Positions 37,291-51,400 of a DNA stretch of 64,000 nt are shown here, piece by piece (the stretch's first letter is position 1; the number at the start of each line of letters is the position of its first letter). The stretch is taken from assembly GCA_950097015.1 (NCBI GenBank), contig CATNEN010000038.1, forward strand, positions 1,302,001-1,366,000. The letters are read 5' to 3'. A model generated the notes under the pieces. It made no database searches. It was not told the origin of the DNA and was given only the letters and a program-made list of their open reading frames with translations. Both the position numbers and the translations under genes were made by a program. The DNA is from Macrostomum hystrix. Taxonomy: Eukaryota > Animalia > Platyhelminthes.

Positions 37291-39627
37291 ATGTCAACCG
37301 ACATCAACTCTGTCTTCTGTTGTCTTTGCAGCAGCTTTCTGGTGCTGGCAAATTTAATCTGGCTGGTGAGAAATTTTTCAGAATTTAATTTAATGAACAG
37401 TACAAAGACCACGCGTTATTTTACCTGGGTAAATACCTGTAGTTTATTTCAAATACCCGCAGGCTCGCAAACTGAATGACCGATTTAAGTGAAGGTCCTT
37501 CCGAAAGATCAAAATATTATTTAAATATTTGGGAGATACAGAGAAAAGAAAACGTGGGTAGCAGAAATACGTCTTTCTACTGCTTTCTTGAATTCTCGTC
37601 CGCCAACAAATCGTCCCCCCACCTTCCAGATACTCGGACTTTCTTGCATTGTCCTTGGCGCGGCCTGGGACCTACTGTTGAAATCAACGACTGCCAGCAT
37701 CGAGTCAGAGGATCTGCGCCTCATCATCGGCTACCTGCGATCTGTGGCCCGCGCGGCTGGCGTAGATGACGTCAGCTCGGCTGCTCATAATGCACTGCAA
37801 TTTGTTGGGCCAATCGACACAGTCCTGCTCCTGCTGGGCATCTGCCTCACACTGCTGGCTGTCCTCGGCTGCTGCAGCCTGGGCTGCAGGTCCCGCTTCT
37901 GCCTGGCTGCTGTGAGCAACTGCTGCACCACCTCACTGACCCACCACCTCACTGACCCACCACCTCACTGACCCACCACCTCACTGACCCACCACCTCAC
38001 TGACCCACCACCTCACTGACCCACCACCTCACTGACCCACCACCTCACTGCCCCGTCACCAACTGACCTACCACCTCAATGACCCACCACCTCACTGACC
38101 CACCACCTCACTGACCCACCACCTCACTGACCCACCACCTCAATGACCCACCACCTCACTGACCCACCACCTCACTGACCCACCAGCTCACTGACCCACC
38201 ACCTCAATGACCCACCACCTCACTGACCCACCACCTCACTGACCCACCACCTCACTGACCCACCACCTCACTGACCCACCACCTCACTGACCCACCACCT
38301 CACTGACCCACCACCTCAATGACCCACCACCTCACGGACCCACCACCTCACTGACCCACCACCTCACTGACCCACCACCTCACGGACCCACCGCCTCACT
38401 GACCCACCACCACAATGCCCTATCAACATTGCTTATCGATTAATCACTTTCCTTTTTTAGTACCTGGCCATCGTTTCGCTAGTCTTCTTTGCCCAGCTTC
38501 TAACCCTGATGCTACTGTACGGCAGCCCTGAATCTGTGAGTGAAATATTGCCGAGTGCTACTCTAATTCTTATTTACTCTAATTCTAGACTTATGCAAAT
38601 TCTGTTCGCAGTTCAAGGCTGTGGTAAAGCAGCTCATGGCGACAGGCTTGAAGCGCTACCGCGGCAGCAACTCGGCCAATGGTGAAAGCCTGCTGCAGAA
38701 CGCACTGCAAATCTATGCCGGCTGCTGCGGGGTTAATAACGGTAGCGACTTTGTAACAATGACCCAGCAGTGGGATCGCAGCTACACAGTCGAGCTCTTC
38801 AGAAAGACTGTTACCTATAGTGAGAGCTTAATATGCAATGTGGCACCCTGATTTCGATACATATTTTAATCAAAACCTAACTTCCTAAGCAGCCACTTCA
38901 ATCGATCCGTTCAAATCAATTCACTCCCTGAACAACCACCTCACTCCTCAACAACCACCTCACTCCTCAACAACCACCTCACTCCTCAACAACCACCTCA
39001 CTCCTCAACAACCACCTCACTCCTCAACAACCACCTCACTCCTCAACAACCACCTCACTCCCTCACGAAACACCTCGCTCCACACCTCACTCGTCAACAA
39101 CCACCTCCAGTCCATTACCTGAATTATCTATAAAGTATAATATAGATGCTTTCGTCGCTTCTTTCGTATATTCGCAAATTTATGATCAGCTTAATTTATT
39201 ATCCTCGTTTGATTATTTTAGACCTGACCTATCCAGTCAGTTGCTGCCAGCACGATTTGACCAAACTGAAGCTCCTGGACAGTTTCTGTCCAGTCAACAA
39301 CTTTAACTTCAGCAACCACAGGATTGGTTGCTATGAAAAGGTTATTCAATTTGTTGATCAATGCTTTGAGCGGCACAACATCTTCCACGCCCTGTCCGCG
39401 ATCGTTGGCATTCAGGTTAATACATACAAATCTAGATTTGTGTAACGTATAGTATGAACTTGAGTTGCTAGTTAGACAAAATCTGATCAATCTTAGATTA
39501 ACCATCCGTTTATCTAAGATTATTCCACTTCACTGTCATTAAACCATTTCAGGCTCTACTCATCGCTGGCATTTTGGTAATCTTTCGAGACATCACCGTA
39601 AGAAGTAGCAAGGTGCATCCCGTGTAA
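37291..39627 (+). CDS. Tetraspanin B, about 302 aa
   Basis: Six exons: 37291-37365, 37630-37911, 38461-38535, 38612-38819, 39222-39415, 39553-39627. GCCGVNNGSDF, YPVSCC and IGCY motifs; same intron phases as tetraspanin A. Confidence 0.9.
37925..38415. repeat. 16-bp intronic minisatellite (CCACCTCACTGACCCA)
   Basis: Direct periodicity in tetraspanin B intron 2. Confidence 0.95.
38930..39110. repeat. 19-bp intronic tandem repeat (CAACAACCACCTCACTCCT)
   Basis: About 8 copies in tetraspanin B intron 4. Confidence 0.9.
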
Positions 39628-40199
39628 ATTGACTTATTTTAATGGGGCTAACAAACTATTTGTTAAAACTTTTGTAATTTTGAAGTTAAATCCTCATTAT
39701 ATGGTTATACGCGCGGGTAATTTTCATTTGCCTTTACCTGAAAATCGAACATATAATAAAAATAAAATGTACGATAGCGTACATTGATGCTCAATCATTA
39801 TCATGTGCTAATAGTAACGCAATATCGCAAATGGCTGGAACACCATGTAAGTTCAAATGCATGAGGACAAAAAGTGCGGATTTTTTAAACGCAACGTTTT
39901 AGCATGATAAAACTAAATTTTAAGCAAATAAAGATTTTAATAGAACCATAGCATATGTCATTTAAATTTAAGGACATTCTTTATAAACTATGTTACAATT
40001 ATCTGATAGCACGAAACTAAATCTGAATCATTTAAATTTCTTGAGGAATGAGTAAATAAAACTTCTTGCTCCGATACGACTTATTTTATTGTTGTGTTGA
40101 TTGACTTTTGTATTTGTCAGTTGTTTACCAACTCCTCATTCAAAACGGACCAACGCAACAAACCAATGTTTGAAAACCGTTTCAATATCAAGCCAGAAA

Positions 40200-41856
40200 A
40201 TTACGCGTAAAAAGAGAAAACGCATAAATTCGAGGGTGATACTTTGCCCTTCTGTAAGTGATAATAATGCTATAATAGCTAGTATCGTGTTAGAATACTG
40301 ATTGTTTTTGTCTGGTTTGGTTAAAATATAAAGACGTTCTGTATTAATCATTATGCACTTAGCATCAAGCTCAAAAGTTGTTAATCTGAGTATCTGACAA
40401 TAAAGTTCACAAAATTAAAAGGTCTTGACTCTTGCTAGTCCTCAAGAATTCACAAGCTTAAAATCTCATGGTTGCTGGAGTTTAGCTATAAAAAATCGAT
40501 ATATTGCTTAACTAGGTTAGATAAATTGTCAGAAAAGTGACAAAATGTGTGCAAAAAATATTGCAACCAATAAAAAGTGGTGCACTACATGTTAATACTA
40601 GGCCTAATACAATTATATTTTTGTGTCATGAACCAAGACACTAGGGTACCAGATTGGGTCGACGTAAACATTAAAAAGACAATTAATAACTTTGGGGCCC
40701 TTATCATTGGAATTATGTAATGTACTGCAGTATAGGCTTAATAAATAATTCTTTAAGAATCCTACCTTTTACTTAGAGATTGGTGTTCTTAAAACTTGCT
40801 TGCTAATTCTATGAAATCATATGCTAGGCCTCTTATTATTAATGTAATGCATACAAACTCTTACCTTAATTCATTATAGTTACCTATGTAGTAAGATGCT
40901 TTTATCACTTTAAAAAAGTATAATTCATACCTATGCTCTTTGTTTAAATGTGCTAAATATTGTTTATATGTAAAAATAAAATATCACTAATTCTGTCAAT
41001 TTCATTCACCTTAACAAACCTTTTTGTGTATACAAATGATTGCAATTTCTGTGAGACAAATCAATGTGCCAGTGTAACGAAAAACAAATAAGCTTTTATT
41101 GAGTAAAGAGGTAAGAGTGTTTAAGTGTTGAGTTGGTTATTTGAGGCTGTGACCCTCTGATCCACAGAAAATGCCTAGCAAAGACAGGAGAATAAGAGAC
41201 CAATGCCTTAGAAAGATAAACTGTGCCAAGTGCCAATTGATACACTACCACATTGAGAGAGACAAATATAGAGTGTTAAGCCCTGTTATACCTACTTAGT
41301 TGCCACTTGTTAGGTTATATTATATATTTATATTTGACTATATTGTATATATATTATAGATTTATTATATCTAATTGACTACTTGAATATTAGAAATTAA
41401 CAAAACTCTCATAGGTTACCTCACCTTTTATATCTTATTTATCCCATTATTCTAAATCTCTCAGCTTTCTGACATTCTGACATATCTCATGTCCCCCTTT
41501 ATGATCTATTGACAAATTGTCTTTGTCTATTTTGTGTTTTGTCTTTTTTGTCGATAAGTACATATTTTTAATTCTGAATTTCTTTTTTAACCTTTATTGT
41601 TTGTGGAAGCCAAATTGTTATTGTAAATTATTAGAGCCATAATCAGGACATCATCTCTACCATATTGACAATTTAGACCTCAATACCTACTTAAAGTACT
41701 AGATGTACATAGAACCAACTTGTCCCCAATGTCTAATAAATGCAGGTGGACGCATCGGCTGAGCCACCTGAGTGCCTGCCAGCCTCAATTGTTGCTGACC
41801 ACAATCGCATCCCACCGTGGGATCCAGATCCGTTTAAGCACAGCGCCTGCTACTAA
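40200..41856 (+). promoter_or_regulatory. AUU-initiated, spliced upstream coding region (uCC-type uORF, 54 aa) in the leader of the ODC-like gene
   Basis: AAA-ATT start at 40200, ITRKKRKRINSRVILCPS, donor GTAAGT at 40254, acceptor TGCAG at 41745, in-frame VDASAEPPECLPASIVADHNRIPPWDPDPFKHSACY-TAA (41856). Basic N-terminus and PPW motif as in the AZIN1/ODC uCC. Confidence 0.85.
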
Positions 41857-42070
41857 CATTTACTGACTAATTAACCCTACTTTTTCAGTTCAATTTTCGT
41901 TTGTCTATCCTGAATAATTATTTTGTGTTCTTTATTCACTGCAAACAATTTTCCTTTCTCCGTGATTTTTGTCTCTGTCTACTGACAACTAATCAGTTCA
42001 GTAGAGTATAGCACGCTTTTATTCTAAGTAGCACACTAGAAAGCCAGTTAAATAGAAAATTATCTGCCCG

Positions 42071-43411
42071 ATGAGAGAGAGTCAGCAGGAGCAGAATCTG
42101 GAACATCATCAACAGCAGCAGCAGCAGCATCTGCTTTCAGCCCCAACGCCGGCATCATGCCCGCCAATCGGCTGCGCGCTCGCTCCCCACCTGTCCGGCC
42201 TAGTTGGCTGCGATGAGCCCGTAGTGGCCTGCGATTTAGCCAGCGCCCAGCGCTGCCTGGCCGACTGGGCTGCCAGATTTCCCAACGTGCACGCCTCAAC
42301 CAGCGCCCAGGCCTTGGGCAGTCGGCCGCTGACTCGCCTACTGGCCATCAGTGGCCGGGTGTCATTTCGAGCCTACTCAAAGGTTGGCGACTGAGACTCA
42401 GTGTTTTATGCTGCGTCTGCTGTTAGACCCGAGCTGACACCGTTGACCTATTTGGTACCCACCCCCATTCGTCCCCACAGTCCGACCTTGACGCGGCCGT
42501 GTCTGCTGGTGTCCCGGGCCACGCCATCCTACTGGCTAATCCGTGCAAAACTCGCGGCCTTGCTGGCCACGCTCGCCGACTTGGCGTTGGCGTCACCGTC
42601 TTCGACTCGGAGCCTGAGCTGCAACGCCTCGCCACCGCCTGGCCAGAGGTCGAGGTTCTGCTGCTCCTGGCAGCTTCGCCGCGCTGCCACCGCCTGGGCG
42701 CTCGGCCGGAAGACGCGCCGCGCCTGCTGGCCGCGGCTCGTCGTTACGGCCTTCGCGTCGCCGGCGTCGCCGTCTGGTTCGGTGACGACGAGGACATCGT
42801 TGGTGCCGAAGACGGCGAAGTCGACGGCTACGTTGACGCTGAGGGCGAATGGGCGACGGCTGCAGCCACAGCCTGCAGCACCTTAACCTTGGCCCGACGT
42901 CTTGGCCATGTCGGCGCTGACGTGGTCGACCTCGGCTGTCTGTCCACAGCTGTTCTGGCCGGCCGCGCCCTGCCAGCGTTTGATGCTGCCGCCGGTGAGT
43001 TAATCACCTCATAGATCCCCACTTCAGAGATCCTCATTTCAGATATCCTCACTGATGTTCTTTACAGATGTCGCCGAACTTGACAATGTGCGTCTCCAGC
43101 GTCCTCGTCTGCTCTGTGACCTGACGCCGGCTCTACTAGCCGAATCGGTTGTCATGGCAACCAAAGTGCTAGCGAAGGCGGCTGCGGAGCTGCCAGGCGG
43201 CTACAGCTACAGGCTGAGCGGACCCGGTCTTGGCGGCCAGCTGTGTGGCCTGTTCGGCCGGGAGGAGAGCAGCGACGGCGTGCCCAGCCGTCTTGCCGAT
43301 TGCGGCGGTGACCCGCTGACTCTGGTCCTGCCTGAGCTCAGCGTCGGTGATTGGCTGTTGTGGCGTGGCATGCGAGCTTGCCCAACTGCGGCACGCCTGA
43401 TGCACTGGTAA
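42071..43411 (+). CDS. Ornithine decarboxylase-like pseudoenzyme (antizyme-inhibitor-like), about 389 aa
   Basis: Exons 42071-42382, 42481-42994 and 43068-43411 in phase. ODC-fold landmarks WAARFPNV, ILLANPCK, VFDSEPEL, VVDLG and LPELSVGDWLLW retained; PLP-binding and catalytic residues replaced. The 3' end may splice at 43408. Confidence 0.85.
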
Positions 43412-43447
43412 GACTGCGTCAAAGTTGCTAATCAGATCCCATTTCCA

Positions 43448-44075
43448 AAAAACAATCCTTTAAGATCACCTCCTTCCACATCCCCTCCTTCCACATCCCC
43501 TCCTTCCACATCCCCTCCTTCCACATCCCCTCATTCCACATCCCCTCATTCCACATCCCCTCCTTCCACATCCCCTCATTCCACATCCCCTCCTTCCACA
43601 TCCCCTCATTCCACATCCCCTCCTTCCACATCCCCTCCTTCCACATCCCCTCATTCCACATCCCCTCCTTCCACACGGCCTCCTTCCATATGGCCTCATT
43701 CCACATCCACTCCTTCAACATCCCCTCCTTCCACATCCCCTCCTTCCACATCCCCTCCTTCCACATCCCCTCATTCCACATCCCCTCCTTCCACATCCCC
43801 TCATTCCACATCCCCTCCTTCCACATCCCCTCCTTCCACATCCCCTCCTTCCACATCCCCTCCTTCCACACGGCCTCCTTCCACATGGCCTCATTCCACA
43901 TCCACTCCTTCAACATCCCCTCATTCCACATCCCTTCTTCCACATCCCCTCCTTCCGCATCCCCTCCCTCCACATCCCCTCCTTCCGCATCCCCTCCTTC
44001 CACATCCCCTCCTTCCACATCCCCTCCTTCCACATCCCCTCCTTCCACACCCCCTCCTTCTACACTCCCTCCTTC
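43448..44075. repeat. 15-bp minisatellite (TCCTTCCACATCCCC)
   Basis: Direct periodicity. Confidence 0.95.
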
Positions 44076-47000
44076 TAGATCCAATCATTTCCGATCACTT
44101 CAGATCCCTACTTATAGATGATAGCCAACTCTAACGATACATCCCTATCGCTCTGACGTTGCCAGTCTGTTCACCGGCGAATTGATGGACACTAAGGCGG
44201 CCGCCTGTCTAGAAGAGGAGCCGCTGCCAGCCTCTTGAGCTGCTCAGCAATTTCTGTCGGGCCAGAAGAAGAGCAATCTACCAGCAGTGATTCTCCCTAG
44301 CCCATTCAGTTTCGCACACTGGCGCCTACTTTTTACCTTAAATTTTTTCTCTACTTTTTAAGCAACAATAAACGGTCAGGTGGCGATCGCTTCTCTGCGC
44401 CTACTATATTCGGCTATGTAACTACTAATTAGTAGGTAGCTCGGCGCACGCTTTCCTTATTTATCCAATTATCGCTTCTCGTTTTCCCCATAGATTGGCT
44501 GTTGTAGCTTTTCCATCGGTTAAGAATTTAGATTTTCTCAAATATTTTCTTAACCGCTTTTCTTATTGTCATTGAGTCATTTTAAACCACATTTTAACTA
44601 CTTTATCAATTGCGTCTGCTTATCACACAGAAGCCAATTAAATAATTACTGATCAAGCACTGATCAATTTACAGCCAGAATCGAGTTTGAACAGCAAAAC
44701 AATTGCAAACAAACAAATCGTTGTTATAACCACAACCACAGTGCGGGCGAAATTGTTCAGTGCAGGGCTTCATTATCTGTGTTATTCTACAGTTAAAAGC
44801 TATAGAGGCTTCTAGCACTATTATGCGCCCAATTTTGCAAATTCTTCCCAAAATCCGATTTCCGCGCTTTTACTGTGCCGCAATTATTTTGTTTAGTGTT
44901 TTTTTAAATGATTTTTTTCTTCTTTGAATCAAAATTGTTTTTTTTCCAGCACTTTTGCTGTTGCGTCTGTCTTTGGAGCTGCCGCTTTAGACATTTCAAA
45001 TCAAATCTATAAAAAATCATATTAGCGTGACTAAAACAAAAGCCAATGGGTATAAATATTTAGGTTTTGTACAGAGCAGCTCGACAGACTCATAGTTTGC
45101 CAATTGTTCCAGTTGTCGTGTTGAGTTATACAAATTTTATCTACAATCCTATATTATCTCATAAACCCATAATTAATAGCTTTTACACGCTAATATAGAA
45201 TTGTTGTCAGCCACAATGCTCCATTAATGTTATTTTCACTGAGTCAATTGTAATTCTCCAGTTTTTTTGGCAAGTCTTTAATTTTTTGCCGATCAAGTAG
45301 CTGAGAAGCGATGATTTCTGTTGTGCACGGAGCTGACTATAATTTGAAGATGCGATCTAATCTTATTAATAGCCTGCATGAACACTTAAGGCTGAAGAAA
45401 TCGGATGGCTTTTTTATTTTTAACAAGAACAATAAAAATGAATTAATTTCCGATTGCGACTTTAGTCGCACGAAAAATTCGCGCTAACATAGATTAACGC
45501 CCTCCGAGTCATAGCGCGCTTTTCTGATCACCAGTCCGTTCGTCAGCTTTTTGGCACAGGACCGGAGCGGCTCTTGCTATCAATTGCTATCGATTTTAAA
45601 ACCAAAACAAAAAATCGTCTTAGTTTATTTTTTTACTTTTTGTCTTTATTTACATGTGATACTGAGTTGTAACAAAATATAAAATGGAAAAATGGATTCG
45701 TCACAGTACCGAATACGGAGACGTTGATAGTTTTAGCACACGGATTCTAAAATTGAAGTCGCATAAAAAAACATTTTAGTTTCGATCTGTCATTATGCAT
45801 ATGATCTAAAGTGAGTTTTAGGTTAACAAAGGCCGTTGCAAACATAATGTAGGTGATTTTATCTGACTTATCTACGCAAAAAAGTTTGTCAGTTTCTTAT
45901 TGCATGGACTTCTACTAAAAATACTTATACTGGTTTTAATGCGTAAAACCATTTAGATAATTTAAAAATATTTTACTTAGAAACATATGTTAGCTATGCT
46001 TGCTTAGTCCATTGCTTTTTAAAACACATAAAGGTGTTATAAGTGTTGTAATTAGTTGAAAGCTTTCCTGCATTTTCCTTACTTTAGTCCCTTTTATTAA
46101 GTAGCGTATTTTTTATAAATCAATTTTCAGAACAGTATACATAACTCTTTCAATAGTTTCTAGATACAAATATTCAAAAGCAAAATGTTAATTTTTGCAC
46201 AATCAAGTGATTTATGTGTGCCATTTTTTGGTACGCTACATGAAGTAAATTAATTAAGTAGGCCTAACAAAACTGTAATATATTATAGAAACAGGATACT
46301 TGATGCTAAGTCATGTAGGTAATTATGTAATTGTGTAGCCTATTGATCCATCCTACCATACAGTCTTTTTGTAAAACAAACTAAATAATAAATAACAAAC
46401 ACAAAACTCCAGTCAACTAATCAAATCAGTCTAGCTAATTTGACATTGAGTGTTTATGAATAGGCCTACTTATGATTTATTGTTTCTGTATTTCTTTCTA
46501 TTCAAGTTATAAAAGCCAATTTTGTAACATAAATAAATTTATAATTTAAATCAAATCACCACTGAATCTGTTCTTCTAAAGTTTCATTTTCAGGCTCTAA
46601 ATTTTCATGACTGCATCTTATATTATAAATTATAGTTATTTATTTATATATAACTAAATTATACAGATTTGCTATATATAATCATTTAAATAATATAAAA
46701 CTAGCATCTACTCCTTGAAGGATTGCAAAAACAGATAGGGCACCAATTTAAAAATAGAATGCCACAAACTAGGAGATTAACAAAATTTTGATTACCAAAA
46801 ATTTTGTGCTGTGTGCCCTCATTAACAAGTAAAAGCAACTTTGTGTCCTATAAAAAATGTATTTTTGTAACAAAGTTTTAAGCTTTTGTGCTACTGTAGA
46901 GAAAGCTATAGGAATGCAGTGCAATCAAACTTGTTGAGTCATTCATAAACTCACTAAATGTGGCACTCAAACTCCAGTTACTTTAGTAACTGAACCATGA

Positions 47001-48483: not shown

Positions 48484-51400
48484 ATGTCTGAGCAGACTGC
48501 TCAAGCGCAGCAGCAGCAGCAGCTGGAATGGCCTGAGTGCACCTCACCTGGCGGTCCAGTCTGGGCTGAGTTTCTGGACCCGCCGCTGCAATACACGGCC
48601 ATCGCCTCCTACACGGGAGCCGATGATGATGAGCTCAGCTTCTCAGCCGGAGCCCAGATACTGGTGGTATCACGTGACCCCAGGGACAGCAGGGACGAGG
48701 GCTGGTTTGTGGCTGTCGCAGCTTCTAACGCCAGTAACTCGACCGCCTCCAATCAGGCTAATGATTCCACCGCTGCCGCAGATGAAACTGAAGCTAGCTT
48801 GACTCAGCAAGAACAGCAGCAGCGGCCAGTTCTCAAATTATTACCCGGCAATTTTGTAAGGCCGTCTTCTGAGATTCGATCCAGCGGTGCTGATTATCAG
48901 CAGCAGCAGCAGCAGTGTCAGCTTCAGCAGCTTCGGTCGCCGCCAACAGTATCCTCGCACGAGATTAATTACGAATGCCTGTTGGGATCCGGCGGATTCG
49001 CCGAAGTCCACCGGGCCACCTGGCGCGGCCAGCCAGTAGCCGTGAAGCTGTTCAGTCGAAATTTCTCCCCGGACAAAGTGCGCCGCGAAGCGGAACTAAT
49101 CTGGCTGTGTCGGCATCCGAACATTGTTCAAGTCCTGGCCATTGTGACTGAGTCGCCGCCGGCCCTTCTATTGGAATTCGCCGCCGGCGGGGCGTTGAAC
49201 AATTTTCTGCGCGGCCGGCGACTACCGCCTGATGTGATTGTGCACTGGGCCAGCCAGGTGGCTCAGGGCATGCACTTTTTGCACCAGGGCGCCCCGGTCA
49301 CTGTGTTCCACCGCGATCTCAAGTCTAGCAATAGTGAGCTCTTTATTATATTGTACTTGTATGTCTACTTCTTTTATGCCACTAATTTCACGCAGGTTAT
49401 AACATTGGATTTCGGAAATTCCATTTTTGTTTCGTGGGATTTTATTATCCGTAAATTCCATATCCCATGATTTCATAATCCCAAGATTCCATATCGTGGG
49501 ATTTCATTATCCCTAGATTCCATATCGTGGGATTTCATAATCCCTAGATTCCATATCGTGGGATTTCATAATCTCTAGATTCCATATCGTGGGATTTCAT
49601 AATCCCTAGATTCCATATCGTGGGATTTCATAATCCCTAGATTCCATATCGTGGGATTTCATGATACCTAGATTCCATATCCCATGATTTCATAATACCT
49701 AGATTCCATATCCCATGATTTCATAATCCCTAGATTCCATTTCCTATGATTCATAATCCCTAGATTCCATATCCTATTATTCATAATCCCTAGATTCCAT
49801 ATCCTATTATTCATAATCCCTAGATTCCATATCCTATGATTCATAATCCCTAGATTTCATATCCTATGTTTCATAATCCCGAGATTCCATATCGTGGGAT
49901 TTCATAATACACAGATTCCATATCGTGGGATTTCATAATACACAGATTCCATATCGTGGGATTTCATAATACACAGATTCCATATCGTGGGATTTCATAG
50001 TACACAGATTCCATATAGTGGGATTTTAGAGTACTTGAAAAGTAACATTTTAATTTAAAGTATCTTGCTGATCGATGATCGCATATCTTGTTATTCCGTT
50101 GTGTGTGTGTTTTATGTAGATATTGCCATTCTAGAATATTAATGGCACAGCAGCTTATTACGTACACCAACAAGTCCGCGAGCTCAAAATTGATTTTAGC
50201 GGTACTGACAGCAACTTTAAGAGGCCGGATTCAATTTCTTATTTTCTCCTACCCTCCAACCCTGTCCTGCCACATCCACTCGGCCTTTCCCACCCCAGCT
50301 TCCGTCAACTCCGCATTCCATCCGGCTTGTCGCCCGGCCCGCCCACGCACTGAATGTAGGACAGCAATTGAGCCCCGGCTTTAATAATGTGAAATGAAAT
50401 TTTGGCTCTCCCAGATACACATCCTAGAGTGAGTGCTGAATTCTGAATGCTTTTGCTGTCTAAGTGTAAGTATAAATATATTATCTTCTCTAAAGTACAT
50501 GGAAAGCAAGTTGATGGATATTACTATTTTTATTATTATATCTGAATCTTTTACAAACTTATTCCCCTTGTTGTAAATTCCCCAACTTCAAAATGTCCCC
50601 ATTGTCGATTTCCCATCTTTAAAATGTCCAGTTTTTTTAGATTTCCTATCTTCAGAATATCCCCTTTTCGTGGACTCCACATCTTCAGAATATCCCCTTT
50701 TTGTAGACTCCCCATCTTAAGAATATCCCCTTTTTGTAGACTTCCCATCTTCGAAATTCCCCCCTTTGTGGACTGTACAGTCCAAATCCACGGACTGTAC
50801 AGAGAGAGCTTTACGCAAACTTTAGAAGCTCCGCGTCATAGCTGTGGCTATGCCACTAGCTTTATCCCAGTTAGGCTGCTTTCCGTTTAAATTTATTTGT
50901 GTGGTACTACTGCTAGCCATCTAACAAGTAGTACAGTGCGCGTTTTGAAAGACGTTAATAAAAAAACAAAATATATTGTTTAAACTTTCACAGTATTATT
51001 AAAATTTGCGCCTCGGCCGACATTGGACGATGCGGCTATTGAGGCAGATGAAGGACTCCTCGATGACGAAAGGCTGGCAGACGAGCATCATCGCCAGCAC
51101 AGCTGGCTGCTGTCCCAGGTGCTGCTCATCTCAGACTTTGGCCTAGCCAAAGAGAGCTGCCTGACCCTGCCAGATGTTGACGCCCCCGATGATGACGGCA
51201 ATGCCGACGAAGAAGCCGACCGTCGCGCCGCCGATGGCGGCGTTGGCACCCACGCGTACATGAGCCCTGAGCAGCTTCGCGGCCACTGTCCGTACACCTG
51301 GCATGCGGATGTCTGGTCCTACGGTGTTGTGCTGTGGGAGCTGCTCACTGGCGAAGTGCCCTACGCCAACCTGCTGCCCTACCAGATCATGTTCAACGTG

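What the first reader, a model, noticed from the sequence alone, without database searches (positions are those of the whole stretch)
40200..41856. Hidden AUU-initiated, spliced PPW-type uORF (uCC): a candidate polyamine-sensing translational switch upstream of a dead ODC
Seen: ATT in an A-rich context (AAA ATT A) at 40200 opens ITRKKRKRINSRVILCPS and reaches a perfect GTAAGT donor at 40254. It splices in phase 0 across a 1492-nt intron to 41746, continuing VDASAEPPECLPASIVADHNRIPPWDPDPFKHSACY-stop (54 codons). The spliced leader has no AUG between this AUU and the main AUG at 42071, which is in a weak context (CCG ATG A). Established: vertebrate AZIN1 and many ODC-homologue mRNAs carry an AUU-initiated uCC of similar length with a basic N-terminus and a PPW motif near its C-terminus. 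High polyamines impair eIF5A, ribosomes stall at PPW and queue, AUU initiation rises and the main ORF is repressed. Inference: this locus is such a feedback device. ORF callers miss it because it is non-AUG and split by an intron. The extended tail after PPW (DPDPFKHSACY) and a second PP (EPPE) may be lineage-specific.
Basis: partly seen in the sequence, partly recalled or inferred. Interest (0 to 1): 0.92.

Follow-up and report, generated by a model that had tools for sequence, protein, structure and literature searches.

The report
Flatworm polyamine-sensor-type uORF, second copy
The leader of a flatworm gene for a catalytically dead ornithine-decarboxylase look-alike really contains an intron-split, AUG-less upstream reading frame with a conserved Pro-Pro-Trp motif; it is a lineage variant of the known polyamine-sensing uORF of antizyme-inhibitor mRNAs, and the scan had already found its sister copy elsewhere in this genome.

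Summary
ATT 40200, 18 codons, GTAAGT donor 40254, acceptor before 41746, then 36 codons with PPW and TAA 41854-56.

RNA-derived contigs from four runs in two studies carry exactly the 40253>41746 joint. Single ~3 kb contigs run from ~40095 through the PPW exon into all four exons of the main ORF (ATG 42071).

The only other ODC-family gene in the genome (contig C5) has the same design. The DHNRxPPWDPDP block is 11/12 identical, with 8 synonymous codon changes. Macrostomum lignano protein models start with the same exon-2 peptide for both gene types. A tree places the duplication before the two species split.

Both genes lack the PLP lysine and the other catalytic motifs, so "dead ODC" holds.

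New here: a 14-codon AUG uORF (40166-40210) overlaps the ATT, at the same -34 position in both paralogs. The uCC also does not end in Pro-Ser as the described animal uCCs do.

Polyamine response and AUU initiation are inferred, not shown. The scan found the sister copy before on other DNA (note s1-332683).

Verdict: real, first reading supported, a new variant of a known kind, moderate interest.

The parts
40095..40253 (+). Leader exon 1 of the ODC-like mRNA (5' end approximate)
   Evidence: RNA-derived contigs begin at 40095 (X6), 40105 (X5), 40129 (X1) and 40143 (X2), and all end this exon at 40253. Contigs cannot fix the true start site.
40166..40210 (+). uORF1: AUG-initiated, 14 codons (MFENRFNIKPENYA), frame +2 relative to the uCC; its TAA 40208-10 overlaps codons 3-4 of the uCC
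   Evidence: It is the only ATG in the leader. The C5 paralog has an ATG at the same -34 position, the same length and the same TAA, within otherwise unconserved sequence (6/20 identity between the ATG and -11). The context is weak (accaATGt).
40200..40253 (+). uCC exon 1: putative AUU start plus a basic N-terminus, 18 codons, ending at a phase-0 GTAAGT donor
   Evidence: The ATT and its gaaaATT context are identical in the paralog, and it is the only in-frame near-cognate codon conserved between paralogs. Nucleotide identity is 28-30% upstream of -11, 9/11 for -11..-1, 39/54 in the exon and 22% in the intron.
40254..41745 (+). Leader intron (1492 nt, GT..AG) splitting the uCC in phase 0
   Evidence: The joint 40253>41746 appears in contigs of 4 runs from 2 studies. 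The paralog has an intron at the same codon position. There are no Rfam matches. The stretch 41117-41223 matches diverged expressed repeat copies from elsewhere.
41746..41856 (+). uCC exon 2: 36 codons plus TAA
   Evidence: It is contiguous in mRNA contigs with the spacer and the main ORF. It is conserved in the C5 paralog and in M. lignano models P0159 (first 13 residues, 12 identical) and P0005/P0153/P0154.
41761..41769 (+). First diprolyl motif, EPP (followed by E/D)
   Evidence: Invariant in the M. hystrix C38 and C5 copies and in both M. lignano gene types. EPP is listed among eIF5A/EF-P-dependent pause motifs in PMC5499558.
41797..41832 (+). Conserved core DHNR-x-PPWDPDP; PPW is at 41812-41820
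   Evidence: 11/12 residues are identical to the paralog with 8 synonymous codon differences, including CGC/AGA for Arg. The block is identical in the M. lignano C5-type. PPW is the stall motif of the AZIN1 uCC (PMC11058473, PMC9082881).
41857..42070 (+). AUG-free spacer (214 nt) between the uCC stop and the main AUG
   Evidence: It is unspliced in mRNA contigs. The paralog spacer is only 59 nt and is not alignable.
42071..42382 (+). Main ORF exon 1 (104 codons) of the dead ODC homologue; Gln sits at the PLP-lysine position
   Evidence: The M. lignano orthologue P0155 also starts MRESQ. The K69 column reads STSAQAL against FYAVKCN.
42481..42994 (+). Main ORF exon 2, matching Orn_Arg_deC_N
   Evidence: Pfam PF02784 at 2.4e-8. 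His197 is replaced by Trp and the GGG loop by GCL. The joint is shown.
43068..43407 (+). Main ORF exon 3
   Evidence: The joint is shown. The EPGR, PTCD and GAYT motifs are all replaced.
44166..44238 (+). Main ORF exon 4 with stop TGA 44236-38
   Evidence: Loose ends behind 43407 in all four runs read TCTGTTCACCGGCG..., which is 44166 onward. The intron 43408-44165 holds a 15-nt tandem array.

Best explanation
This is a translated regulatory upstream conserved coding region (uCC) in the mRNA leader of a flatworm antizyme-inhibitor-like pseudo-ODC. The genome is most likely Macrostomum hystrix. Shown: the mature mRNA carries leader exon 1, the PPW exon, a 214-nt spacer and the main ORF. The 54-codon frame has no AUG. 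Its ATT, its basic start, EPP and DHNRxPPWDPDP are kept under peptide-level selection in two paralogs that separated before M. hystrix and M. lignano split. The main protein has lost the ODC catalytic residues. Inferred by analogy with vertebrate AZIN1: most scanning 40S subunits pass the weak AUU and translate the main ORF. The few ribosomes that start at AUU pause at PPW (probably helped by the following DPDP) when polyamines are high and eIF5A is impaired. Ribosomes then queue over the 123 nt back to the AUU, roughly four footprints. That raises AUU initiation and blocks access to the main AUG, so less antizyme-inhibitor-like protein is made. A short leaky AUG uORF one footprint upstream (34 nt), ending just past the AUU, is a conserved extra layer whose role is not settled.
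For: Splicing and continuity of the leader with the main ORF: (4 runs, 2 studies; single ~3 kb contigs in X5 and X6). AUG-free frame and coordinates. Paralog with the same architecture upstream of the only other ODC-family gene. Synonymous-change pattern in the core (8 synonymous changes among 11 conserved residues). Conservation begins at -11 and stops at the donor. ATT is the only conserved in-frame near-cognate, and an in-frame TGA lies 10 codons upstream in the paralog. M. lignano peptides for both gene types. Duplication older than the species split. Dead catalytic site in both clades, with the ANPCK...FDSE region retained. Mechanism of the AZIN1 uCC and the PPW/EPP pause motifs from the literature: PMC2811004, PMC9082881, PMC11058473, PMC5499558.
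Against: There is no ribosome profiling, reporter or polyamine data, so translation of the uCC, the AUU start and the polyamine response are all inferred. The uCC does not end in Pro-Ser, as animal uCCs of six phyla are said to do. In this copy the frame is open 33 codons upstream of the ATT, so another near-cognate start is not excluded here. uORF1 overlaps the AUU and could divert or occlude ribosomes, a feature not described for AZIN1. Only contigs were laid, not raw reads, so isoform proportions and the true 5' end are unknown. One X2 contig has 39 unplaced letters 5' of 41746, which could be a trans-spliced or variant leader lacking exon 1. I could not align the peptide to published animal uCC sequences, because the primary papers are not held.
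Confidence: 0.7

Rival explanations
1. It is a conserved, translated peptide-coding uORF that does not sense polyamines. It could be a constitutive damper of the main ORF, a sensor of general eIF5A/hypusine or proline-tRNA status, or a micropeptide with its own function.
For: Peptide-level conservation shows selection on the peptide, not on what it senses. No catalytically competent ODC was found in this genome, so the classical ODC-antizyme-AZIN loop may be rewired. The Pro-Ser end of the animal uCC is absent.
Against: It sits upstream of ODC homologues in both paralogs, which is where the known polyamine-sensing uCC lives. It shares the PPW motif that is the polyamine-dependent stall site in AZIN1. 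An antizyme gene with a frameshift site is reported in this genome by an earlier scan note (not rechecked here).
Confidence: 0.15
2. The frame is translated but not from the AUU. Initiation could be at another near-cognate codon further upstream (TTG 40101, TTG 40170, ATA 40185), or could be coupled to termination of uORF1 at TAA 40208-10.
For: Frame 0 is open from 40101 in this copy. uORF1 ends 8 nt past the ATT in both paralogs, an arrangement that could permit local re-initiation.
Against: None of the alternative codons is conserved in the paralog, where an in-frame TGA closes the frame 10 codons upstream. Nucleotide conservation starts only at -11. ATT with A at -3 is identical in both copies.
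Confidence: 0.08
3. The PPW exon is an alternative coding exon or N-terminal extension of the ODC-like protein rather than a separate uORF.
For: M. lignano database models P0005, P0153, P0154 and P0159 begin with the exon-2 peptide and join it in frame to the main ORF through different predicted junctions.
Against: At this locus the mRNA contigs are unspliced from 41746 to 42382. TAA 41854-56 ends the frame, and the main ATG is in another frame (325 nt downstream, so +1). The M. lignano joins differ between models of near-identical genes and lack a start codon, which looks like gene-model fitting. NCBI models of the same genes start at the Met.
Confidence: 0.04
4. It is a chance open frame in a 5' UTR with no function.
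For: Short AUG-less frames are common in leaders, and a PPW alone is not rare.
Against: The same split frame sits upstream of the only paralog, with synonymous-only change in the core. It is conserved in M. lignano, and the conservation boundaries coincide with the ATT and the splice donor.
Confidence: 0.02

Closest known systems
uCC of vertebrate antizyme inhibitor 1 (AZIN1) mRNA (Ivanov, Loughran & Atkins 2008; Ivanov et al. 2018; as summarised in PMC2811004, PMC9082881, PMC11058473)
   Same: It sits in the leader of a catalytically inactive ODC homologue and has about 50 codons. It has no AUG, and a conserved AUU with a purine at -3. Conservation is concentrated near the C-terminus, with a Pro-Pro-Trp motif tens of codons downstream of the AUU. 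The downstream main AUG is in a weak context.
   Different: It does not end in Pro-Ser. PPW is followed by a conserved DPDP and then a variable tail of 6-7 residues. A second conserved diprolyl (EPP) lies upstream. A conserved 14-codon AUG uORF overlaps the AUU. The host gene is a flatworm-specific pseudo-ODC, not an orthologue of vertebrate AZIN1. Function is untested here.
uCCs of ODC homologues in other animals and fungi (PMC2811004)
   Same: A non-AUG upstream conserved coding region with adjacent prolines near the C-terminus, in the 5' leaders of ODC-family genes.
   Different: The review describes animal uCCs of six phyla as ending in Pro-Ser, and fungal ones as independent inventions of 22-100 codons. 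I could not find whether flatworms were among the six phyla, and this one lacks the PS end.
Sister copy in the same genome (contig C5; earlier scan note s1-332683)
   Same: Identical architecture: ATG uORF at -34, gaaaATT, 18 codons, GTAAGT, phase-0 intron, EPP, DHNRxPPWDPDP, a stop, then a dead ODC homologue.
   Different: The spacer is 59 nt instead of 214 nt, the tail is TALRRI instead of FKHSACY, and the main AUG has G at -3. The main proteins share only about 50% identity over their best 100 residues.
Peptide-dependent uORFs of AdoMetDC mRNAs (MAGDIS in mammals; small uORF ending Pro-Ser in plants; PMC2811004)
   Same: A polyamine-pathway mRNA controlled by a nascent-peptide-dependent ribosome stall in a uORF.
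   Different: Those uORFs start with AUG, are shorter, and stall at or near termination. They are unrelated in sequence.

Membership tests
Animal uCC of ODC-homologue mRNAs | Lies in the 5' leader of an ODC-family mRNA, separate from and upstream of the main ORF | tested here: met
   mRNA contigs join 40253>41746 and run on to the main ORF. The stop is at 41854-56 and the main ATG 42071 is in another frame. The main ORF matches PF02784.
Animal uCC of ODC-homologue mRNAs | No AUG start; a conserved near-cognate codon (usually AUU) in a good context | tested here: met
   There is no in-frame ATG. gaaaATT is identical in both paralogs and is the only conserved in-frame near-cognate. Actual initiation at the AUU is not testable with these tools.
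Animal uCC of ODC-homologue mRNAs | Conserved as a peptide, mostly near the C-terminus | tested here: met
   The DHNRxPPWDPDP block is 11/12 identical with 8 synonymous codon changes between paralogs. M. lignano peptides for both gene types match.
Animal uCC of ODC-homologue mRNAs | Adjacent prolines / Pro-Pro-Trp near the C-terminus | tested here: met
   PPW at 41812-41820, which is codons 41-43 of 54.
Animal uCC of ODC-homologue mRNAs | Ends with Pro-Ser (stated for animals of six phyla, PMC2811004) | tested here: not met
   This copy ends ...FKHSACY-stop and the paralog ends ...TALRRI-stop. It is therefore filed as a variant, not as a standard member.
Animal uCC of ODC-homologue mRNAs | Sequence homology to published animal uCC peptides | not tested
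   The primary papers (Ivanov 2008, 2018) are not held. A text search for the motif found nothing relevant. No reference uCC sequence was available from any tool.
Animal uCC of ODC-homologue mRNAs | Polyamine-enhanced repression of the main ORF that depends on the start codon and the C-terminal peptide | not testable with these tools
   This needs reporters or ribosome profiling.
Antizyme inhibitor (functional class: inactive ODC homologue that binds antizyme) | ODC fold with loss of catalytic and PLP residues | tested here: met
   K69>Q, H197>W, GGG>GCL, EPGR>DLTP, PTCD>CGGD and GAYT>RACP in this gene and its orthologues.
Antizyme inhibitor (functional class: inactive ODC homologue that binds antizyme) | Binds antizyme | not testable with these tools
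   The only indirect hint is that the best-conserved stretch (ANPCK...FDSE...) overlaps the region known, from my own knowledge, as the antizyme-binding element of ODC.
Antizyme inhibitor (functional class: inactive ODC homologue that binds antizyme) | Orthology to vertebrate AZIN1 | tested here: inconclusive
   The flatworm genes form their own clade apart from the active ODCs sampled. PMC2811004 dates AZIN1 to early vertebrates, so independent origin is likely. No vertebrate sequence was in the tree.

The most novel reading that the evidence does not exclude
The leader is a two-gate queue sensor. A leaky AUG uORF is kept exactly 34 nt (about one ribosome) upstream of the AUU and ends just past it, so a PPW-DPDP stall about four ribosome lengths downstream would raise initiation at both starts. 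It operates in an animal that seems to have no catalytically competent ODC at all: both ODC-family genes are dead and both carry the uCC. The antizyme / antizyme-inhibitor / uCC circuit would then have been kept and duplicated to control something other than ODC, for example polyamine uptake or a horizontally acquired decarboxylase.
Probability: 0.15. Interest if true: 0.7.

Novelty: new variant of a known kind. Interest (0 to 1): 0.45.

Why it matters
It extends the AZIN1-type non-AUG, PPW-stalling uORF to free-living flatworms, with RNA proof of the split frame. Because two old paralogs both kept it, the comparison separates what is constrained from what is free. Constrained: the AUU context, the basic start, EPP, DHNRxPPWDPDP, the AUU-to-PPW spacing and a short overlapping AUG uORF. 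Free: the tail, the stop position and the spacer length. Macrostomum lignano is transgenic-tractable, so the queue model could be tested in a whole animal. If the lack of an active ODC in this genus holds up, it raises the question of what the conserved antizyme/antizyme-inhibitor circuit regulates there. It also flags an annotation problem: database models of M. lignano graft the uCC exon onto the main protein.

Tried and rejected
No M. lignano or other Macrostomum leader DNA could be read, so conservation of the ATT, exon 1 and uORF1 outside M. hystrix is untested.

With the frame-0 translation of leader exon 1 it found no candidate.

3. The primary uCC papers (Ivanov 2008 PNAS, Ivanov 2018 Mol Cell) are not held by DOI or PMC id. 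A motif text search gave only irrelevant hits, and no paper links uCCs to flatworms.

4. Rfam at gathering threshold over 39000-45000 found nothing, so a known RNA element is rejected as an explanation.

5. PF00278 (the ODC C-terminal domain) found nothing in the genome. An active-ODC protein query hit only the two dead loci.

6. My first guesses for the exon 3 frame and the exon 1 end were off by 1-3 nt (error) and were corrected from the RNA joints.

7. Exon 1 of the main ORF alone finds no PDB relative.

8. The joined (spliced) uCC and the joined main protein were never built for any search or fold.

10. Structure prediction, fold search and complex prediction were not used, because none would bear on the uORF question.
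Full report
WHAT IS THERE. The window is G000:C38:1302001-1366000 of a 220,453,370-base, 42-contig assembly. Earlier scan notes call the genome a Macrostomum flatworm. Its size and contig count equal those published for Macrostomum hystrix (about 220 Mb, 42 contigs; PMC10468722). The species name is therefore an inference.

- ATT at 40200 in cagaaaATTa.
- 18 codons (ITRKKRKRINSRVILCPS), then GTAAGT at 40254.
- Acceptor tgcag|G, with the exon starting at 41746.
- 36 codons containing EPPE and DHNRIPPWDPDP, then TAA at 41854-56.
- A 214-nt spacer without ATG, then the main ATG at 42071 in cccgATGa.

RNA EVIDENCE. One run search gave eight holders from two studies. I laid window:39100-43420 on four of them: X5 and X6 (organism C, no differences from the window over 3 kb), X1 (organism A) and X2 (organism B).
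- All four carry a contig with the joint 40253>41746 (skips 1492, GT..AG).
- In X5 and X6, single contigs of 3043 and 3092 nt run 40105/40095-40253 | 41746-42382 | 42481-42994 | 43068-43407. They then continue into TCTGTTCACC..., which is 44166 onward.
- These contigs are intron-free, so they derive from RNA even though the runs are not labelled as RNA.
- They show that the AUU exon, the PPW exon, the spacer and the main ORF lie on one mature transcript, with no further intron in the leader.
- They are contigs, so they say nothing about abundance, isoform ratios or the exact 5' end.
- One X2 contig (record 8) lies on 41746-41787 with its first 39 letters unplaced. A variant or trans-spliced 5' end cannot be excluded.

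THE DOWNSTREAM GENE. The main ORF has four exons: 42071-42382, 42481-42994, 43068-43407 and 44166-44238.
- Exon 2 matches Pfam Orn_Arg_deC_N at 2.4e-8. The full-length orthologue P0001 matches at 7e-14 and hits human ODC structures at 3e-14.
- In an alignment with five canonical ODCs, with the M. hystrix exons added piece by piece, every catalytic landmark is replaced. FYAVKCN becomes STSAQAL, so the PLP lysine is Gln. FHVGSG becomes VWFGD. GGGFPG becomes GCLSTA. EPGR becomes DLTP. PTCD becomes CGGD. GAYT becomes RACP.
- The same replacements are present in the M. lignano orthologue P0155 and in two other orthologues. This is a conserved pseudo-enzyme, not a decaying gene.
- "Dead ODC" is therefore supported. 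The best-kept stretch is ANPCK...FDSE...
- That the protein acts as an antizyme inhibitor is inference.

A SECOND COPY, AND WHAT IT SHOWS. Only two loci in the genome match the ODC N-terminal domain or an active ODC protein: this one and C5:5007360-5007938.
- A six-frame search with the 36-aa PPW exon finds only itself and one other place, C5:5006852-5006929 (E 0.005). That place lies about 450 bp upstream of the other ODC-family locus.
- Reading that locus (L006) shows the same design. There is an ATG 34 nt upstream of gaaaATT, then 18 codons (IPRKKKRRRNQRVCLHPF), GTAAGT, and an intron.
- After the acceptor cag| come 35 codons (AHKDPEPPDPGPRQPLSDHNREPPWDPDPTALRRI), a stop, a 59-nt spacer and the main ATG.
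- In the block DHNRxPPWDPDP, 11 of 12 residues are identical. Eight of those eleven use different synonymous codons, including CGC versus AGA for Arg. This is the signature of selection on the peptide rather than on the RNA.
- In an ungapped register, nucleotide identity is at background upstream (10/36 for -70..-34; 6/20 for -31..-11). It is 9/11 for -11..-1, 39/54 in uCC exon 1, 6/6 at the donor, and back to 13/60 in the intron.
- Conservation therefore switches on just before the ATT and off at the splice site.
- The ATT is the only in-frame near-cognate codon shared by both copies. In the paralog an in-frame TGA closes the frame 10 codons upstream.

OTHER SPECIES. The background search with main-ORF exon 2 and the follow-ups recovered orthologues of both gene types.
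- A maximum-likelihood tree gives two clades, each with 100% support. Each contains an M. hystrix and an M. lignano sequence. The duplication, and with it both uCC copies, is therefore older than the split of these two species.
- Several M. lignano UniRef models begin, without a Met, at exactly the first codon of uCC exon 2.
- P0159 (C38-type) begins VDTSAEPPECLPA, which is 12 of 13 identical to this window (the tool printed the first GTG as M). For comparison, main-ORF exon 1 is 83% identical.
- P0005, P0153 and P0154 (C5-type) begin AVKDPEPPDPNRLLTDHNREPPWDPDPTT.
- These models then join the peptide in frame to the main ORF at three different points, while the NCBI models of the same genes start at the Met. 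I read these joins as gene-model fitting rather than real N-terminal extensions, but I could not check the DNA.
- Across M. hystrix C38, M. hystrix C5 and the M. lignano C5-type, EPP, DHNR and PPWDPDP are invariant. The M. lignano C5-type peptide is two residues shorter between EPP and DHNR, so the AUU-PPW spacing is similar but not rigid.

All four contig 5' ends (40095-40143) lie upstream of an ATG at 40166.
- This ATG opens a 14-codon frame (+2 relative to the uCC) ending at TAA 40208-10, inside codons 3-4 of the uCC.
- The paralog has an ATG at the same -34 position, the same 14 codons and the same TAA. The 20 nt between the ATG and -11 are unconserved.
- The chance of an ATG at one given position is about 0.016 in this composition. 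The shared position is therefore suggestive (roughly p = 0.02), but with only two sequences it is not proof.
- Both ATGs are in weak contexts. There is no other ATG in either spliced leader.

HOW IT MOST LIKELY WORKS. The following is established for AZIN1 (PMC2811004, PMC9082881, PMC11058473).
- Most scanning ribosomes skip the AUU.
- High polyamines impair eIF5A, and the few ribosomes translating the uCC stall at PPW.
- Following ribosomes queue back to the AUU, uCC initiation rises, and the main ORF is repressed.
- PPW and EPP are among the eIF5A/EF-P-dependent pause motifs, and Asp followed by Pro/Gly also pauses (PMC5499558).

The following is shown here: the element has the position, the AUG-less frame, the conserved AUU, the PPW and the peptide-level constraint.

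The following is inferred. The same stall-and-queue switch operates. The distance from the A of the AUU to the second Pro codon is 123 nt, counted exon by exon, which is about four ribosome footprints. The uORF1 AUG lies one further footprint upstream. uORF1 might let a fraction of ribosomes bypass the AUU and re-initiate at the main AUG, or it might act as a second queue-sensitive start. I cannot tell which.

COMPARISON WITH THE KNOWN. It works like, and is built like, the animal uCC of ODC homologues.
- It fails one described feature. Animal uCCs of six phyla end in Pro-Ser, but this one has DPDP followed by a variable tail.
- I could not align it to published uCC peptides because the primary papers are not held.
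- I therefore file it as a lineage variant of a known kind rather than a standard member.
- It is not new to this scan. Note s1-332683 describes the C5 copy as spliced and conserved in four species. I re-derived the C5 sequence features and the M. lignano conservation independently, but I did not re-check its splicing.

LIMITS AND STEPS LEFT OUT.
- The single read-laying run used contigs only.
Database orthologues served as full-length proxies.

VERDICT. The function (AUU initiation, polyamine response) remains inferred by strong analogy. Interest is moderate: the class is known and the sister copy had already been found. The paralog pair, the conserved overlapping AUG uORF, the missing Pro-Ser end and the apparent lack of any active ODC in the genome add something worth following.

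Noticed in passing
whole genome G000; window 42071-44238 and L006/L007 (C5:5007008-5008320): Only two ODC-family loci were found in the 220 Mb assembly (PF02784 and an active-ODC protein query), and the ODC C-terminal domain PF00278 found none. Both loci lack the PLP lysine and the other catalytic motifs. No catalytically competent eukaryotic ODC was detected, although earlier notes report an antizyme gene and a bacterial-type Lys/Arg/Orn decarboxylase in this genome. The assembly's BUSCO completeness is only about 84-85% (PMC10468722), so absence is not proven.
   Followed up: partly
proteins P0005, P0153, P0154, P0159 (M. lignano UniRef models): Database models of both M. lignano ODC-like genes start without a Met at exactly the first codon of the uCC's second exon. 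They join it in frame to the main ORF at differing points. This is probably a mis-annotation that grafts a uORF exon onto the protein, or possibly real in-frame isoforms in that species.
   Followed up: partly
window 41746-41787 (run X2, record 8): An 81-nt RNA-derived contig lies on the first 42 nt of the PPW exon, but its first 39 letters fit nowhere on the stretch. It could be a spliced-leader trans-splice at the 41746 acceptor or a divergent allele of exon 1. It could not be read.
   Followed up: no
window 41117-41223: Inside the leader intron, short contigs from X5 and X6 match with 3-8 differences per ~85 nt and run on into unlike sequence. This looks like a dispersed repeat expressed from other loci, not part of this gene.
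   Followed up: no
window 43465-44075; also 38000-38411 and 38921-39081: Long, clean tandem arrays of short C/T-rich units sit inside introns or between genes: 15 nt x 41 copies in intron 3 of the ODC-like gene, 16 nt x 26 copies, and 19 nt x 8 copies. A similar array follows the C5 paralog's exon 2 (repetitive ORFs at L007 2577-3009).
   Followed up: no
window 38460-39625 (+): The upstream neighbour on the same strand looks like a multi-exon tetraspanin-type gene (CCG...GCCGVNN motif in its ORFs), ending about 470 nt before the ODC-like transcript starts. One splice (39410>39548) was seen in X5.
   Followed up: no
window 48484-49470 (+): The downstream neighbour starts with an exon encoding an SH3 domain followed by a protein kinase domain (Pfam PK_Tyr_Ser-Thr 2.5e-20, SH3 1e-4), which resembles a mixed-lineage kinase.
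   Followed up: no
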